13,316 nt of DNA. Origin: Octopus sinensis. Taxonomy: Eukaryota. Within the stretch, counting starts at the first letter, position 1. Every line of letters starts with the position of its first letter. Below, piece after piece: positions 223 to 13,023 of this stretch. The stretch covers positions 1 through 13,316 of the forward strand of contig NW_021826292.1 in assembly GCF_006345805.1 (NCBI RefSeq), read 5' to 3'. A program made the position numbers and the translations under genes. The notes under the pieces are model-generated. The model did no database searches and was not told where the DNA came from. It worked only from the letters and a program-made list of their open reading frames with translations.

Positions 223-291
223 CTATGGAGAGAAAGAAAGAATAAATGATGAAGAAAGAAAGGATGAGGAGAGTTAAATTAATTGATTCAG

Positions 292-415
292 TGTATGTGT
301 ATGTATGTATGTATGTATGTATGTATGTATGAGTGTGTGTGTGTGTGTATGTGTGTATGTATGTATGTATGTGTGTGTGTGTGTGTATGTGTGTGTGTAT
401 GTATGTATGTATGTA

Positions 416-450
<35 letters not shown>

Positions 451-912
451 GTATGTATGTATGTATGTGTGTGTGTGTATGTGTGTGTGTATGTATGTAT
501 GTATGTGTGTGTATGTGTGTGTGTATGTATGTATGTGTGTGTGTGTGTATGTGTGTGTGTATGTATGTATGTATGTGTGTGTGTGTATGTGTGTGTGTAT
601 GTATGTATGTATGTTTGTATGTATGTATGTATGAGTGTGTGTGTGCATGTATGTATTTATGTATGTATGTATGTATGTATGGATGCATGGACGTGTGGAT
701 GTGTGTGTGTGTTTGTTTGTATGTATGTATGTATGTATGTATGTATGTATGAGCGTGTGTGTATGTATGTATGTTTGTATTTATGTATGTTTGTATGTAT
801 GTATGTATGCATGTGTGTGTATGTATGTATGTGTGTATGTATGTGTGTATGTGTGTATGTATGTATATAGGTATGTATGTATGTATGTATGTTTGTATGT
901 ATGTATGTATGT
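292..912. repeat. Compound (TATG)n/(TG)n microsatellite, about 620 bp
   Basis: Directly visible. Source of the HT/VCMY pseudo-ORFs. Confidence 0.97.
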
Positions 913-2919: not shown

Positions 2920-3367
2920 CTGGCAATAAGAAGAAGAAAAGGAGAGAGATAAAAGATGTGGATTAATATAAGAATATTATTTAAAAGAGATTTATTGTTA
3001 TTATATAATGATTTGTGGTTAAATGCAAAGATGCATGCATGCATGCATATATATATACATATATGCAGACTTATGTATTTTCATTTTTATTACTATATGA
3101 TCAAATGCCACACATCCACTTCCAAGTACGTTTTATCAATATATATATATAAACCTCGCCAAGATAAATATTTAAACCACCTGATGAATGACTGTAACTT
3201 GAAAATTTAAAGAAATTAACAGCCATGAAACGATCGTAGTGATATATTAATTATATTTTTTTAATAATTTTGTTATATATTTAAATAATATAAATTAAAT
3301 AATCTTATGTATTGGCTTAAGTTTTTCATTGTATGATTTGCCTAATAGTGGTTTTGTCTCTAATTTA

Positions 3368-3410
<43 letters not shown>

Positions 3411-3412
<2 letters not shown>

Positions 3413-3660
3413 AGGCGCAATGGCCCAGTGGTTAGGGCAGTGGGTTGTGGTTGTAGGATCGCGGTTTCGATTCCTAGACCGAAAACAACTAAAACTCCAC
3501 GACGCTCTGGCAAGGGCTGGTGGCGATCCCTGCTGTACTCTTTTGCCACAGCTTTCTCTCACTCTTTCTACTGTTGGTCTGCTCGCTAAAACAATGTGAA
3601 GCACATTGCGACTAGCGATGTGTAGCAACATCTGATAGCCTGGTCAGTCACAGTGATATA
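3411..3660 (+). mobile_element. tRNA-derived SINE (second family, ggaggcgcaatggcccagtgg head)
   Basis: Pol III A-box-like tggcccagtgg at 3421-3431 and B-box-like ggtttcgattcc at 3463-3474. No tRNA acceptor stem, and a non-tRNA body follows. The 3' boundary is approximate. Confidence 0.75.
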
Positions 3661-3663
3661 TAT

Positions 3664-4002
3664 TGGCATCTTGGGCAAGTGTCTTCTGCTATAGCCCCGG
3701 GCCGACCAAAGCCTTGTGAGTAGATTTGGTAGACGGAAACTGAAAGAAGCCTGTCGTATATATGTATATATATGTATGTGTGTGTGTGTGCTTGTGTGTC
3801 TGTGTTTGTCTCCCTAGCATTGCTTGACAACCGATGCTGGTGTGTTTACATCCCCGTGACTTAGCGGTTCGGCAAAAGAGACCGATAGAATAAGTACTGG
3901 GCTTACAAAAAATAAGTCCCGGGGTCGAGTTGCTCGACTAAAGGCGGTGCTCCAGCATGGCCGCAGTCAAATGACTGAAACAAGTAAAAGAGTAAAAGAG
4001 TA
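3664..4002 (+). mobile_element. 5'-truncated CORE-type tRNA SINE with internal microsatellite and (AAGAGTA)n tail
   Basis: Highly similar to the reverse complement of 8731-9070. cttgggcaagtg resembles the MIR/CORE motif. CORE-SINEs are known in octopus (OR2 family), but the family name is not verified here. Confidence 0.85.
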
Positions 4003-4026
4003 TATATGTATGTATGTATGTATGTG

Positions 4027-4089
<63 letters not shown>

Positions 4090-4192
4090 CAACAATTGAG
4101 GGTAAAATTAATTAATTATTAATCAGTTTCACCAAGTGTTCAGTATGTAAAGGGACCATTATAGGCGAATTCAAAATATTACATTATATATA

Positions 4193-5642: not shown

Positions 5643-5953
5643 ATATATGAATACATAAATGGAGTTTAACGCAGGTGTAAATCAAATATTTTTACTTTTG
5701 ACACATGTTTCGAAAATTTCACTGATACTATTCAAAAGAATAAATGGTATAAACAATGCAATCTTCTCCTCAGGAAAGTGAAAAAAACGAAACTCGGCAA
5801 TAAGACATTTTAGCAAAAGATGATGGATTTGTATAGCGATTGACAGAACGCTATTAATATTGTTTAAAAAAACGTTATATGATATAACGTCATAAGTAGC
5901 TAACAGAAAGTAAAAATATTTGATTTACACCTGCGTTAAACTCCATTTATTTA

Positions 5954-5962
<9 letters not shown>
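5643..5962. repeat. 56-bp inverted repeat pair (5643-5698 and 5907-5962) enclosing the hammerhead
   Basis: atatatgaatacataaatggagtttaacgcaggtgtaaatcaaatatttttacttt matches the reverse complement of 5907-5962 with one mismatch. Confidence 0.92.
5689..5785 (-). ncRNA. Type I minimal hammerhead ribozyme motif (Penelope-like-element type)
   Basis: Minus strand: stem I 5' strand uuuucacuuuc; core CUGAGGA (5773-5767); stem II GAAGAUU/AAUUUUC closed by G-C and extended into a long hairpin; GAAA (5711-5708); stem III C-AUGU-G with a palindromic loop; GUC cleavage triplet (cut between 5700 and 5699); stem I 3' strand AAAAGUAAAAA. Stem I pairs at 9 of 11 positions. Confidence 0.7.
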
Positions 5963-5986
<24 letters not shown>

Positions 5987-7016: not shown

Positions 7017-7590
7017 CTATTTCTTTACTACCCACAAGGGGCTAAACACAGAGGGGACGGACAAAGGGATTAAGTCGATTACATCGACCCCAGTGCGTAA
7101 CTGGTACTTATTTAATCGACCCCGAAAGGATGAAAGGCAAAGTCGACCTCGGCGGAATTTGAACTCAGAACGTAACGACAGACGAAATACCTATTTCTTT
7201 ACTACCCACAAGGGTCTAAACACAGAGGGGACAAACAAAGGGATTAAGTCGATTACATCGACCCCAGTGCGTAACTGGTACTTATTTAATCGACCCCGAA
7301 AGGATGAAAGGCAAAGTCGACCTCGGCGGAATTTGAACTCAGAACGTAGCAGCAGACGAAATACCTATTTCTTTACTACCCAGAAGGGGCTAAACACAGA
7401 GTGGACAAACAAGGACAAACAAAGGGATTAAGTCGATTACATCGACCCCAGTGCATAATTGGTACTTATTTAATCGACCCCGAAAGGATGAAAGGCAAAG
7501 TCGACCTCGGCGGAATTTGAACTCAGAACGTAGCGGCAGACGAAATACGGCTACGCATTTCACCCAGCGTGCTAACGTTTCTGCCAGCTC
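7017..7590 (-). mobile_element. tRNA-derived SINE (third family): one A-box head plus three tandem body units of 174, 174 and 184 bp
   Basis: Units at 7017-7190, 7191-7364 and 7365-7548, head at 7549-7590. Each unit carries a B box (minus-strand gttcaaattcc). A monomeric relative lies at 9902-10117. Confidence 0.88.
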
Positions 7591-8144: not shown

Positions 8145-8520
8145 GGTTCTGGGTTCAGTCCCACTGCGTGGCATCTTGGGCAAGTGTTTTCTGCAATAGC
8201 CCTGGGCCGACCAATGCCTTGAGTGGATTTGGTAGACGGAAACGAAAGAAGCCTGTCGTTATAATATGTTATATATAGTGTGTGGTATGAGTTTGTGTGT
8301 CTGTGTTTGTCCGCCTAGCATTGCTTGACAACCAATGCTGGTGTGTTTACGTCCCCGTCACTTAGCGGTTTGGCAAAAGAGACCGATAGAATAAGTACTG
8401 GGCTTACAAAGAATAAGTCCCAGGGTTGATTTGCTCGACTAAAAGGCGGTGCTCCAGCATGGCCGCACTCAAATGACTGAAACGAGTAAAAGAGTAAAGA
8501 GAGTAAAAGAGTAAAGAGTA
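8145..8520 (+). mobile_element. CORE-type tRNA SINE lacking the A-box head
   Basis: Collinear with 3664-4002 and the reverse complement of 8731-9095. Ends in an (AAGAGTA)-type tail. Confidence 0.88.
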
Positions 8521-8709: not shown

Positions 8710-9333
8710 TTAGTCCTTCAGCATTCGGATTACTCTTTTTACTCTTTTACTTGTTTCAGTCATTTGACTGCGGCCATGCTGGAGCACCGCCTTTAGTCGA
8801 GCAACTCGACCCCGGGACTTATTCTTTTGTAAGCCCAGTACTTATTCTATCGGTCTCTTTTGCTGAATTGCTAGGTGACAGGGACATAAACACACCAGCA
8901 TCGGTTGTCAAGCAATGCTAGGGGACAAACACAGACACACAAACACACACACGCATATATATATATACATATATACAACGGGCTTCTTTCAGTTTCCGTC
9001 TACCAAATCCACTCACAAGGCATTGGTCGGCCCGAGGCTATAGTAGAAGACACTTGCCCAAGGTGCCACGCAGTGGAACTGAACCCGGAACCATGTGGTT
9101 GGTAAACAAGCTACTTACCACACAGCCACTCCTGTCATTACTCTGTCAAATGTAATGCTTATTTTTCTCAAATTGTTTTGAATAAATCAAGCATTATCTC
9201 ACAGCTACCAATGATGAAATAGTTTTATTTTTAGAACGACATTGCAGGATAGGTGTGAGAAGGTTGATCTGGTCATTTTGAACATCAAACAGGTAGAAAA
9301 TTTGGCCTGGATATTGCTAGCTTAAATACTAAA
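8710..9333 (+). mobile_element. Degenerate TTAA-type MITE split by the SINE (8710-8736 plus 9137-9333)
   Basis: The joined halves read ccttcagcattcggattactctgtcaaatgtaatgcttatt..., collinear with 9339-9500 and the reverse complement of 11913-12143. Confidence 0.75.
8731..9134 (-). mobile_element. Full-length CORE-type tRNA SINE with probable TSD attactct
   Basis: Minus-strand head caggagtggctgtgtggtaag (A box), gggttcagttcc (B-box-like), ccttgggcaagtg (CORE-like), internal microsatellite and aagagta tail. attactct occurs at 8729-8736 and 9137-9144. Confidence 0.9.
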
Positions 9334-9338
9334 CAACC

Positions 9339-9692
9339 AACCTTTTAGCATTCAGATCACACTGTCAAAAGTAATCCTTATTTATCCACATTGTTTTCAA
9401 TTAATCATGCATTATCTTAAAGCTTTGAAATTTCAATGATGTGAATGTTGATTTTTAGAATGACATTGTAGGGTAGGTGTGAGAGGCTGGATCTGGTCTT
9501 GTTTTGAATTAATCATGCATTATCTCACAGCTTTGAGATTTCAATGATGTGATTGTTTATTTTTAGAATGACATTGTAGGGTAGGTGTGAGAGGCTGGAT
9601 CTGGTCTTGTTTTGAATTAATCATGCATTATCTCACAGCTTTGAGATTTCAATGATGTGATTGTTTATTTTTGGAATGACATTGTACGGTAG
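9339..9692 (+). mobile_element. Second copy of the MITE, 3'-truncated, with an internal 108-bp tandem triplication
   Basis: Unit starts (ttgtttt) at 9391, 9499 and 9607. Units 2 and 3 are nearly identical. Confidence 0.85.
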
Positions 9693-9697
9693 AAAGA

Positions 9698-9778
<81 letters not shown>

Positions 9779-9796
9779 TGTTATTATTATTATTAT
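9698..9796. repeat. (ATT)n microsatellite
   Basis: Directly visible. Confidence 0.97.
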
Positions 9797-9901: not shown

Positions 9902-10117
9902 GAGCAGGCAGAATTGCTAGCACGCCAAGTCAAATGCTTAGCAGCATTTCGTCAGTCTCCATGTTCTGAGTTCAAATTCCGCCAAGGTCGACTTTGCCTT
10001 TCATCCTTTTTTTTGTGAGGTGGGGGGTCGATTAAATAAGTACCAGTTACACACTGGTGTCAATGCAGTCGACTTAATAGCCTACCCCAAGCTGCTCTTG
10101 TGCCAAAAATTTGAAAT
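9902..10117 (+). mobile_element. Diverged monomeric copy of the third SINE family, with a different 3' tail
   Basis: gttctgagttcaaattccgccaaggtcgactttgcctttcatcc...ggggtcgattaaataagtaccagttac matches the reverse complement of the 7017-7590 units. The tail is cttgtgccaaaaatttgaaa followed by (ATT/GTT)n. Confidence 0.85.
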
Positions 10118-10119
10118 CA

Positions 10120-10216
10120 TTATTATTGTTGTTGTTGTTGGTGGTGGTGTTGTTGTTGTTGCGGTTGTTGTTGTTGTTGGTGGTGGTGTTGTTGTTGTTG
10201 CGGTTGTTGTTGTTGT
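10120..10216. repeat. (GTT)n/(GGT)n compound repeat with a duplicated module
   Basis: Directly visible. Confidence 0.9.
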
Positions 10217-10345
10217 TACTGATAAGGCTAAACTGTCCTCTGTTGTTTAAACAAAACAAAACAAGAGACTGTCAAGTGCTTTAGCTGAAGTATTATACAA
10301 TGTCAGAGATCATATGATAGCGGGCCTTCTGTACTGTTGTATAGG

Positions 10346-11395
10346 AATGGTGGTGGGTGGCAGTCGTGGTGGTGGTGGTGGTCGTCGTCGTTGTCGTCGT
10401 CGTCATCATTGTAGTGGTGGTGGGTGGTGGCGGTGGTGTTGTTGTTATTGTTGGTGGTGGTGGTTTTGGTTGTAGTGGTGGTGGGGGGGTGATAGTGGTG
10501 GTGATGGTGGTGGTTGTAGTGGTGGGTGGCAGTCATGGTGGTGGTGGTGGTGGTGGTTGTAGTGGTGGTGGTGGTGGTTTTGGTTGTAGTGGTGGTGGTG
10601 GTGGTTTTGGTTGTAGTGGTGGTGGTGGTGGGTGGCAGTGGTGGTGGTGGGTGGCAGTGGTGGTGGTTGTAGTGGTGGGTGGCAGTCGTGGTGGTGGTGG
10701 TGGTGGTGGTGGTCTTGATATTGCTGTGTAATAATGGTGGCAGTATGTTGAATGATTGTGAGATATTTTGAATCTGTGTCTAAGCACCTGTGTGTGTGTG
10801 GTAATGGTGGAGTGTGTGAATATGTGTGTATGAAGGTGTGTGTGTGTGTGTGTGTGTGTGGTTTGGGATGGTGTAGGGTGGTGTCCTGAATACCATAAGT
10901 ATTGTAGTAATGGTAGTAGCTGTGAAGAGCTTTGGTGGTGCTTGAATATCTTGTACAGGTGGCTAGTGGAGGTGGTGGTGGTGGAGGGGGTGGTGATGGT
11001 GGTGGTTGCAGTGGTGGTAGTGATGATGGTGGTTGTAGTGGTGGTTGTAGTGGTGGTAGTGATGATGGTGGTGGTAGTGGTGCTGGTGGTAATGGTGATG
11101 ATGGTGGTGACAGTAGTAGTAGTGGTGGTAGTGGCCATCGTTGTGGTGGTGATGGTAGTATTGGTGGTGGTTTTGTGGTGATTGTCGTAGTGATGGTGGT
11201 GGTGGTGGTGGTGGTGGTGGTTGTAGTGGTGGGTGGCAGTCGTGGTGGTGGTGGTGGTGGTATTTGTGATGATGGTGATGACGGTGGTAGTAGTGGTGGG
11301 GGTGGCCGTCGTTGTGGTGGTGATGGTAGTGGTGGTGGTGGTGGTGGTGATTATGGTGGTGATTGCAGTGGTGATGGTACTGGTGCTGGTGGTGT
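10346..11395. repeat. About 1 kb of (GGT)-based low-complexity sequence, interrupted by a (GT)n and near-unique segment (about 10713-10960)
   Basis: Directly visible. The module ggttgtagtggtgggtggcagtc recurs near 10512, 10664 and 11219. Confidence 0.9.
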
Positions 11396-11453
11396 TAGGT
11401 ATGGAGGTATGAGGGCATATACACACATGATTTGATACTGTATGAATAATAAT

Positions 11454-12779: not shown

Positions 12780-12965
12780 TCAGTTTCGCTGATGTGGGTG
12801 GGTCTTCTCAAGAACTTCATATCACCAGACATCTCAGTCCATTGTCACTTCCCCTGCGAGGCTCAGCTTCCTGAGATTGGTCCTTACCACTTCATCCCAT
12901 ATTTTCCTAGGTCTCCCTCTTCCACAGGTATCATCCACTTTCAGTGATTGGCACTTCTTTATCTC
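12780..12965 (-). mobile_element. RTE-clade LINE ORF C-terminal remnant (pseudogenised)
   Basis: Translates to IKKCQSLKVDDTCGRGRPRKIWDEVVRTNLRKLSLAGEVTMD*DVW*YEVLEKTHPHQRN*. The GRGRPRK.W...V..DL...L.....DR..WR pattern is typical of RTE C-termini. Confidence 0.8.
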
Positions 12966-13023
12966 CAGAGCGTCGGTTGCGGGGTCACTCCGAAAAGCTC
13001 TATCTGCAACAATTTCATCTCAA

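What the first reader, a model, noticed from the sequence alone, without database searches (positions are those of the whole stretch)
5689..5785. Hammerhead ribozyme motif in GPR143 intron 3, on the transcribed strand
Seen (minus strand): a complete catalytic core CUGAGGA...GAAA...GUC. Stem II opens with the canonical G-C pair and extends through cauug/cagug, auac/guau and uauuc/gaaua. Stem III is minimal with a palindromic loop (C-AUGU-G), and stem I is 11 bp with two C-A mismatches. Established: type I hammerheads with a tiny palindromic stem III are typical of Penelope-like elements and related non-autonomous retrozymes, and they cleave best as dimers. The core-adjacent mismatch at 5699 looks like CpG decay (tcga to ttga on +), and the inverted copy retains G at 5906. 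Inference: a retrozyme-like family in this genome. This copy may be weakened, which would explain tolerance inside a host pre-mRNA.
Basis: partly seen in the sequence, partly recalled or inferred. Interest (0 to 1): 0.85.

Follow-up and report, generated by a model that had tools for sequence, protein, structure and literature searches.

The report
Hammerhead ribozyme relic in octopus retroelement
The hammerhead ribozyme motif is really there, inside a 320-base Penelope-like retroelement fragment in an octopus genome; this copy is probably inactive and it is an ordinary member of a known class, although an internal junction that falls exactly at the predicted cut site suggests the source RNA once cut itself in vivo.

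Summary
On the minus strand, 5785-5688 carries a complete type I hammerhead: CUGAGGA, a G-C-closed 55-nt stem II, GAAA, a one-pair stem III with loop AUGU, GUC, and a stem I with 9 of 11 positions paired. Core plus stems of this quality appeared in 0 of 2000 shuffled windows. Rfam Hammerhead_1 aligns end to end, but only in a narrow search and below threshold (19.5 vs 34 bits).

The motif lies in a 320-nt element (5643-5962). A 263-nt piece (upstream region, ribozyme, 57-nt tail) abuts an inverted copy of the 57-nt tail alone. The inverted repeat is 98% identical and stops exactly at the predicted cleavage site. Its right end abuts a (TA)n microsatellite. This matches the published architecture of Penelope-like element (PLE) insertions.

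This copy is predicted to be inactive: it has no dimer partner, a C-A mismatch sits beside the core, and a -75.8 kcal/mol hairpin sequesters stem I.

Three reader claims remain untested:
- No other copy could be retrieved, so covariation is untested.
- No tandem array was found.
- The GPR143 assignment could not be checked.

The host is an Octopus. Verdict: new member of a known kind.

The parts
5774..5785 (-). Stem I, 5' strand (UUUUUCACUUUC)
   Evidence: Pairs in register with 5699-5688: 9 pairs and 2 C-A mismatches over the first 11 positions. The duplex is -3.6 kcal/mol as found and -5.8 with G at 5699.
5767..5773 (-). Core box CUGAGGA (positions C3 to A9, with N7 = G)
   Evidence: Read directly. 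Aligned to the Rfam Hammerhead_1 core.
5712..5766 (-). Stem II: a 55-nt imperfect hairpin closed by G10.1-C11.1
   Evidence: Folds as 7 bp, a 1x1 loop, 5 bp, a bulge, 4 bp and 5 bp at -12.0 kcal/mol. It is kept in the unconstrained minimum-energy fold of the 102-nt RNA.
5700..5711 (-). GAAA (5711-5708), stem III C5707/G5702 with loop AUGU, then U5701 and C5700; predicted cut between 5700 and 5699
   Evidence: Read directly. ACAUGUGU self-pairs as an 8-bp duplex of -7.4 kcal/mol. Rfam aligns it to the palindromic stem III of RF00163.
5643..5699 (-). 57-nt segment S, directly 3' of the cut site. It holds the stem I 3' strand (5699-5688), forms the left arm of the inverted repeat, and is the inferred 3' end of the element, ending in AUAUAU.
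   Evidence: Inverted repeat with 5906-5962: 55 of 56 positions match, plus the CpG-type difference at 5699/5906. Identity is lost abruptly from 5700 inward.
5786..5905 (-). 120-nt region upstream of the ribozyme within the 263-nt 5'-truncated copy
   Evidence: Lies between the inverted arm and stem I. It has no other copy in the window and no Rfam match.
5906..5962 (+). Inverted copy of S alone. Its inner end corresponds to the first nucleotide after the ribozyme cut site.
   Evidence: It retains G at 5906 where the left arm has the CpG-decayed base.
5957..5986 (.). (TA)n microsatellite abutting the right arm; inferred insertion target
   Evidence: A PLE insertion bias towards (TA)n and AT-rich DNA is reported in PMC8557442 and PMC11167929.

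Best explanation
The region 5643-5962 is a small, fairly young, non-autonomous insertion made by Penelope-like element (PLE) machinery in an Octopus genome. It consists of two pieces.
- A 263-nt 5'-truncated copy of an element's 3' region: upstream sequence, a type I hammerhead, and a 57-nt tail S.
- An inverted copy of S alone, joined head to head with the first piece.

Inferred mechanism. The source element's RNA carried a hammerhead with a minimal, self-complementary stem III. That ribozyme cleaved after GUC, as a dimer or with protein help. During integration at an AT-rich (TA)n site, both DNA strands were nicked and both primed reverse transcription at the RNA's 3' end. One cDNA read through an uncleaved ribozyme and stopped after 263 nt. 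The other ran off after 57 nt, at the 5' end created by ribozyme cleavage. Joining the two cDNAs gave an inverted repeat whose inner edge is the cut site.

The present genomic copy is a relic and is predicted not to self-cleave, for three reasons.
- It is a lone monomer.
- The pair next to the core (1.1-2.1) is a C-A mismatch produced by a CpG transition.
- In any transcript spanning the element, the stem I 3' strand is locked in a 57-bp hairpin.

Shown: the motif, its stems, the inverted repeat and its boundary, the microsatellite flank, the fold energies, and the Octopus origin. Inferred: PLE parentage, past cleavage in vivo, priming on both strands, and inactivity of this copy.
For: Motif and significance:
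- The motif is present as described.
- It was matched in 0 of 2000 shuffles.
- The hairpin-preserving null gives at most 0.0024 per window.
- There were no such motifs in 62 kb of control Octopus DNA.
- Rfam Hammerhead_1 aligns across the full model at 19.5 bits, E=0.014.
- Stems I and II are kept in the unconstrained minimum-energy fold of the isolated 102-nt RNA.

Element architecture:
- The inverted repeat 5643-5698 / 5907-5962 is 98% complementary.
- Identity ends exactly at the predicted cut site. The chance of landing within 1 nt of it is about 3/206, or 1.5%, and this is independent of the motif search.
- Both arms end outward in ATATAT, and the right arm runs into (TA)n.

Literature match:
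- PLE insertions are 5'-truncated, often carry an adjacent inverted 5'-truncated copy, favour (TA)n, and hold the hammerhead in the pseudo-LTR near the 3' end (PMC8557442).
- The purified anole PLE protein cleaves and extends both strands of AT-rich DNA. Its hammerhead cut site lies a few tens of nt upstream of the reverse-transcription start (PMC11167929).
- PLE hammerheads have a minimal palindromic stem III, a conserved G10.1-C11.1 pair and a long stem II (PMC4209133).

Inactivity of this copy:
- The arm duplex is -75.8 kcal/mol and pairs with probability 0.71-1.0, whereas stem I is only -3.6 kcal/mol and has pairing probability 0.

Host:
- A repeat-derived ORF matches O. bimaculoides proteins.
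- The window's repeats are 85-92% identical to copies on an O. bimaculoides chromosome.
Against: - No second copy of the family could be retrieved, so neither conservation nor covariation was tested.
- The Rfam score is below the gathering threshold, and the match is invisible in wider searches.
- No reverse transcriptase or GIY-YIG endonuclease ORF lies in the window.
- Stem II (55 nt) is far longer than in described PLE hammerheads.
- N7 is G, which from my own knowledge is uncommon.
- The left flank carries only a short TA run, so the outer boundary and any target-site duplication are undefined.
- The cut-site coincidence is a single case.
- In the anole system, ribozyme cleavage was not needed for insertion and no RNA ends at the cut site were seen (PMC11167929).
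Confidence: 0.68

Rival explanations
1. A miniature inverted-repeat DNA transposon (MITE or foldback element) with 57-bp terminal inverted repeats. It inserted at a TA site, and its interior happens to carry, or once captured, a hammerhead-like sequence. Under this view the ribozyme plays no part in the element's mobility.
For: - The 320-nt size, the 57-bp near-perfect terminal inverted repeats and the TA-rich flanks are typical of such elements.
- No reverse transcriptase lies nearby.
- There is no tandem arrangement.
Against: - It offers no reason for the inner edge of the repeat to fall exactly at the ribozyme cut site (about 1.5% by chance).
- It offers no reason for a complete core to be framed by three helices.
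- No clear target-site duplication is visible.
- The PLE model accounts for the inverted repeat, the microsatellite flank and the ribozyme position together.
Confidence: 0.12
2. A chance resemblance: AT-rich, hairpin-rich repeat DNA that happens to spell the hammerhead core words around unrelated stems.
For: - Core words alone occur about once per shuffled window.
- The Rfam score is sub-threshold.
- Stem I is A/U-rich, weak (-3.6 kcal/mol) and has two mismatches.
- The fold of the 116-nt context is not unusual (z = -1.34).
- The finding was picked out of a large scan.
Against: - It was matched in 0 of 2000 shuffles, with an analytic estimate of about 2e-5 per window.
- The hairpin-preserving null gives at most 0.0024 per window.
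- There were no candidates in 62 kb of control DNA.
- The coincidence of the inverted-repeat boundary with the cut site is independent of the motif search.
- The G10.1-C11.1 pair and the near-palindromic stem III were not demanded by the search, yet both are present.
Confidence: 0.05
3. A currently active ribozyme or retrozyme. It would cut the host pre-mRNA intron or release a roughly 263-nt RNA that is circularised, giving a regulatory or replicative RNA.
For: - The unit length of 263 nt lies within the 170-400 nt range of metazoan retrozymes, and mollusc retrozymes are highly expressed as circular RNAs (PMC7229834).
- The insertion is young: the arms differ at 2 of 57 positions.
Against: - There is a single ribozyme and no tandem repeat, so two cuts cannot release a unit.
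- There is no partner for dimerisation.
- The 57-bp hairpin outcompetes stem I completely.
- A C-A mismatch sits at 1.1-2.1.
- The hypothetical circle is not unusually structured (z = -0.73, 54% paired).
- Minimal hammerhead monomers are inactive in vitro (PMC4209133).
Confidence: 0.07

Closest known systems
Minimal type I hammerheads of Penelope-like elements (Cervera and de la Pena 2014, PMC4209133; Lunse, Weinberg and Breaker 2017, cited from PMC7761336 and not read)
   Same: - Type I topology and a full conserved core.
- A G10.1-C11.1 pair.
- Stem III reduced to one pair with a self-complementary loop, implying action as a dimer.
- A stem II base helix (7 bp) longer than the canonical 4 bp.
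- Mostly found as lone motifs in truncated elements.
   Different: - Stem II continues into a 55-nt imperfect hairpin instead of 6-8 bp plus a small loop.
[quoted passage not shown]
- N7 is G.
- The loop palindrome needs two G-U pairs.
- No PLE ORF was found next to it.
PLE insertion architecture: Poseidon of Anolis carolinensis (PMC11167929) and the general description in PMC8557442
   Same: - 5' truncation.
- An adjacent inverted 5'-truncated copy forming inverted repeats.
- An AT-rich or (TA)n target.
- The hammerhead cut site lies tens of nt upstream of the element's 3' boundary: 57 nt here, about 85-92 nt in the anole element.
- The anole enzyme nicks and extends both strands.
   Different: - Here the inverted copy ends exactly at the ribozyme cut site. 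The anole study saw no RNA ends at the cut site and found cleavage dispensable in vitro.
- No pseudo-LTR tandem and no recognisable 30-40 bp 'tail' could be identified from one copy.
Metazoan non-LTR retrozymes (PMC7229834; preprint 10.64898/2026.07.22.740005)
   Same: - A type I hammerhead in a short, AT-rich, non-coding unit of a few hundred nt.
- Proposed dependence on PLEs.
- Monomeric copies occur, and many of them lie in introns.
   Different: - There is no head-to-tail tandem array.
- No recognisable loop 1 / loop 2 tertiary contacts are present.
- The hypothetical circle is not highly self-paired.
- An inverted arm is present, which is not a retrozyme feature.
Rfam Hammerhead_1, RF00163 (satellite and retroelement type I hammerheads of newts, schistosomes and others)
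   Same: All 45 model positions align, including the palindromic stem III.
   Different: The score is 19.5 bits against a gathering score of 34. Stem II carries a 51-nt insertion and stem I has one non-standard pair.

Membership tests
Hammerhead ribozyme, type I | Conserved core: C3 U4 G5 A6 N7 G8 A9, G12 A13 A14, A15.1-U16.1, and H17 at the cut site | tested here: met
   CUGAGGA at 5773-5767, GAAA at 5711-5708, U5701 and C5700.
Hammerhead ribozyme, type I | Three helices around the core, with stem I open and stems II and III closed | tested here: met
   Stem I has 9 of 11 positions paired. Stem II is a 55-nt hairpin of -12.0 kcal/mol. Stem III is C-G with loop AUGU, in addition to the A15.1-U16.1 pair. 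Stems I and II appear in the unconstrained minimum-energy fold of the 102-nt RNA.
Hammerhead ribozyme, type I | Reaches the curated Rfam score for RF00163 | tested here: not met
   19.5 bits against a gathering score of 34, seen only in a 131-nt search. There was no hit.
Hammerhead ribozyme, type I | Core conserved and stems covarying among homologues | not testable with these tools
   No homologue was retrievable: window, L001, metagenome and viral scans, translated-frame protein search.
Hammerhead ribozyme, type I | Site-specific self-cleavage after H17 | not testable with these tools
   This needs transcription and cleavage assays. The only indirect hint is that the inverted-repeat boundary falls at the cut site.
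PLE-associated minimal hammerhead | Stem III absent or 1-2 bp, with palindromic 15.2-16.2 and loop 3 | tested here: met
   ACAUGUGU self-pairs over 8 bp (two of them G-U) at -7.4 kcal/mol. The criterion comes from PMC4209133.
PLE-associated minimal hammerhead | [quoted passage not shown] | tested here: not met
   A9 (5767) is followed directly by G5766, which pairs with C5712.
PLE-associated minimal hammerhead | Lies in the pseudo-LTR of an element that encodes a reverse transcriptase and a GIY-YIG endonuclease | tested here: not met
   No Pfam family matched any stop-free stretch of at least 30 aa in the window. Most such motifs are described as lone remnants of truncated elements (PMC4209133), so this does not exclude PLE origin.
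PLE-associated minimal hammerhead | PLE-type insertion signature: 5' truncation, an adjacent inverted 5'-truncated copy, and an AT-rich or (TA)n target | tested here: met
   A 263-nt copy sits next to an inverted 57-nt copy that shares the same outer end, and (TA)n lies at 5957-5986. The criteria come from PMC8557442 and PMC11167929.
Metazoan non-LTR retrozyme | Head-to-tail tandem repeats of 150-450 bp, each with a type I hammerhead | tested here: not met
   There is one copy of the ribozyme and of its upstream region in 13.3 kb, with no direct repeat of the unit.
Metazoan non-LTR retrozyme | Unit RNA is a highly self-paired circle expressed in tissues | tested here: inconclusive
   The hypothetical 263-nt circle folds at -35.6 kcal/mol with z = -0.73 and 54% of bases paired. 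Expression is not testable here.
MITE (non-autonomous DNA transposon) | Terminal inverted repeats flanked by a target-site duplication, in many copies | tested here: inconclusive
   Inverted repeats are present. The outer ends merge into TA repeats, so no duplication can be read. Copy number is unknown.

The most novel reading that the evidence does not exclude
The inverted 57-nt arm is a run-off cDNA copied from the 3' product of hammerhead self-cleavage. On this reading the locus is a genomic footprint showing two things: a PLE-type minimal hammerhead cut its RNA in vivo, and the cleaved RNA was used as a template while both strands of the target primed reverse transcription. If inversion junctions of PLE-derived copies are enriched at hammerhead cut sites genome-wide, that would be the in vivo evidence for ribozyme function in endonuclease-bearing PLEs that the literature describes as lacking or unclear (PMC4209133, PMC8557442, PMC11167929).
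Probability: 0.3. Interest if true: 0.6.

Novelty: new member of a known kind. Interest (0 to 1): 0.3.

Why it matters
Hammerheads in animal retroelements number in the thousands, and another one in a cephalopod would not surprise a specialist. The function of this copy is probably nil.

Two points have some value.
- The role of the hammerhead in endonuclease-bearing Penelope-like elements is still open. A junction that falls exactly on the cut site suggests a cheap genome-wide test: are 5' truncation and inversion points enriched at cut sites?
- The ribozyme has an unusually long stem II (55 nt). That is the kind of variant that standard descriptors and Rfam thresholds miss, so such elements may be under-counted in cephalopod genomes.

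Tried and rejected
Searches for other copies, all negative:
- A protein search with the 80-aa stop-free frame across the element, hoping for ORFs called on other copies.
- Exact-pattern scans of metagenome contigs and viral contigs.
- blastn of the element against the rest of the window.
- blastn against L001, a 76-kb O. bimaculoides locus; only (TA)n matched.

Attempts to fetch the locus or more host DNA:
- An exact look-up of one window ORF returned nothing on record.
- Ten further window ORFs are not in the protein collection.
- A second octopus protein (P0003) was not on record.
- The third and last protein search, with a retrotransposon-like fragment at 12837-13019, found nothing.
- As a result, the GPR143 gene and orthologous introns could not be retrieved.

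Other checks:
- The same test done with stop-free stretches joined by X found no Pfam family. So there is no GPR143 exon, reverse transcriptase or GIY-YIG endonuclease in the window.
- The retrozyme-circle idea got no support, since the 263-nt circle is not unusually structured.
- A second hammerhead-like motif at 3181 was checked for the same inverted-arm footprint, and none was present.

Papers not held in the library: Lunse et al. 2017 and Arkhipova et al. 2017.

Full report
**The observation.**
- Stem I 5' strand, 5785-5774: UUUUUCACUUUC.
- CUGAGGA, 5773-5767.
- Stem II, 5766-5712: a 55-nt hairpin closed by G5766-C5712.
- GAAA, 5711-5708.
- Stem III: C5707 and G5702 around the loop AUGU.
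- U5701 and C5700, then the stem I 3' strand starting at A5699.

Stem I has 9 pairs and two C-A mismatches over 11 positions. Stem II folds on its own at -12.0 kcal/mol as 7 + 5 + 4 + 5 bp with small interruptions. In the isolated 102-nt RNA, stems I and II are part of the unconstrained minimum-energy structure. The hammerhead-constrained fold is -12.5 kcal/mol against a minimum of -15.7.

**Chance.** I wrote a type I descriptor and ran it on the window and on 2000 block-wise dinucleotide shuffles.
- Core words with any one-pair stem III occur about 1.1 times per shuffled window, so the core alone means nothing.
- Core plus at least 7 contiguous stem II pairs plus at least 9 of 12 stem I pairs never occurred. 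From the per-pair frequencies I estimate about 2e-5 per window.
- A harsher null counts all three-way junctions of this quality in the real sequence (3530, almost all in microsatellites) and multiplies by the core-word frequencies. It gives at most 0.0024 per window.
- A control of 62 kb of real Octopus bimaculoides DNA had no candidate even at much laxer thresholds.

**Rfam.** Rfam gives weaker support.
- Nothing at gathering scores.
- Nothing at E<=10 in an 801-nt search.
- In a 131-nt search, Hammerhead_1 (RF00163) aligns over all 45 model positions at 19.5 bits, against a gathering score of 34, with E=0.014 and a 51-nt insertion in stem II.

**What surrounds it.** A 56-nt inverted repeat, 98% complementary, joins 5643-5698 to 5907-5962. 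Extending the alignment shows a single internal mismatch (5654/5951). It also shows a T-versus-C difference at 5699/5906 that is a CpG transition on the left arm. Identity is then lost completely from 5700 inward.

The inner edge of the repeat is therefore the nucleotide that follows the predicted cut site. This was not part of the motif search, and it has roughly a 3/206 chance of arising within 1 nt by accident.

Outward, both arms end in ATATAT. The right arm runs into a (TA)n microsatellite at 5957-5986.

The element is thus 320 nt long. On the minus strand it reads: antisense S (57 nt), a 120-nt upstream region, the ribozyme, then S (57 nt).

**Host.** The window is microsatellite- and repeat-rich. 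A repeat-derived ORF matches O. bimaculoides proteins. The window's repeats are 85-92% identical to copies on an O. bimaculoides chromosome. So the host is an Octopus, though the species is not fixed.

No stop-free stretch of the window matches any Pfam family. The window therefore holds no recognisable exon and no retroelement ORF.

**Interpretation.** The published picture of Penelope-like elements fits every structural feature.
- Insertions are 5'-truncated.
- They often have an inverted 5'-truncated copy immediately adjacent, which forms inverted repeats.
- They prefer (TA)n or AT-rich targets.
- They carry the hammerhead in the pseudo-LTR near the 3' end (PMC8557442).
- The purified Anolis Poseidon protein nicks and extends both DNA strands. 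Its hammerhead cut site lies tens of nucleotides upstream of the reverse-transcription start that defines the element's 3' boundary (PMC11167929).
- PLE hammerheads have a minimal, palindromic stem III, a conserved G10.1-C11.1 pair and a long stem II. They occur mostly as lone motifs in truncated copies, and as monomers they show no cleavage in vitro (PMC4209133).

I therefore read the locus as two cDNAs primed from the two strands of one AT-rich target, both starting at the RNA's 3' end. One cDNA is 263 nt long and passes through an uncleaved ribozyme. The other is 57 nt long and ends where a cleaved RNA ends. This is an inference from a single copy.

**Activity of this copy.** It is predicted to be inactive.
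- Stem I is only -3.6 kcal/mol, or -5.8 with G restored at 5699.
- The arm duplex is -75.8 kcal/mol.
- In the ensemble of the 336-nt transcript, the stem I pairs have probability 0, and the competing arm pairs have probability 0.71 to 1.0.
- There is no second copy to form the dimeric stem III, which would be 8 bp at -7.4 kcal/mol.

Intronic copies are also common elsewhere: 42-44% of Xenopus retrozyme copies lie in introns (preprint 10.64898/2026.07.22.740005).

**Retrozyme reading.** The unit would be 263 nt, inside the 170-400 nt range for retrozymes (PMC7229834). Three things count against it.
- There is no tandem repeat.
- No loop-loop contacts are recognisable.
- The hypothetical circle is not unusually structured (z = -0.73).

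Since retrozymes are now argued to derive from PLE pseudo-LTRs, the distinction may be one of degree.

**Limits.** All attempts to find other copies failed, and the tools hold almost no cephalopod DNA.

**Verdict.** This is a genuine hammerhead-derived motif in a PLE-type insertion relic. It is a new member of a known kind and of low to moderate interest. The one lead worth a genome-wide check is the junction at the cut site.

Noticed in passing
window 3152-3372, + strand (core at 3181-3238): A second, weaker hammerhead-like motif: CUGAUGA, a 39-nt insert, then GAAA C GAUC G UA. It contains a perfect 8-nt palindrome, ACGAUCGU (dimer duplex -12.0 kcal/mol), and is flanked on both sides by (TA)n (3134-3151 and 3373-3411).

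Its stems are poor: a 3-bp stem II base with A-U at 10.1-11.1, and stem I at -1.7 kcal/mol. There is no Rfam hit, the fold z-score is about 0, and there is no inverted arm. A motif of this quality is expected about 0.009 times per shuffled window.

It may be an older PLE-type insertion of another family, or it may be chance.
   Followed up: partly
window 5643-5698 / 5907-5962: If transcribed, the inverted repeat would form a 57-bp near-perfect double-stranded RNA stem (-75.8 kcal/mol) with a 206-nt loop. In a cephalopod this is a plausible substrate for A-to-I editing or small-RNA processing. That is speculation and was not tested.
   Followed up: no
window 7017-7548: Three tandem copies of a 174-nt unit (97% and 79% identical to the first copy). 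They share repeat sequence with other places in the window (about 9950-10060 and 1100-1200) and with O. bimaculoides loci. The repeat looks SINE-like, and its translated ORF matched two O. bimaculoides 'uncharacterized proteins'.
   Followed up: partly
window 9391-9714: Three tandem copies of a 108-nt unit (94% and 75% identical to the first copy), immediately followed by a long (ATT)n run at about 9700-9790.
   Followed up: no
window 3660-4090, 8250-8520, 8730-9134: Several copies, in both orientations, of one interspersed repeat family. They are 82-92% identical to copies in the O. bimaculoides locus L001.
   Followed up: partly
window 12837-13019, - strand: A stop-free stretch ending in ...GRGRPRKIWDEVV...L...DVW. 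From memory it resembles the C-terminal tail of RTE-type non-LTR retrotransposon proteins. Neither the protein search nor Pfam confirmed this.
   Followed up: partly
window 280-910, 2140-2490, 10100-11400: Very long compound microsatellites and minisatellites: (TG/TATG)n, (TA/CATA)n and a GGT/GTT-rich array of about 1.3 kb. They dominate the repeat and ORF listings and produce most of the spurious 'ORFs'.
   Followed up: no
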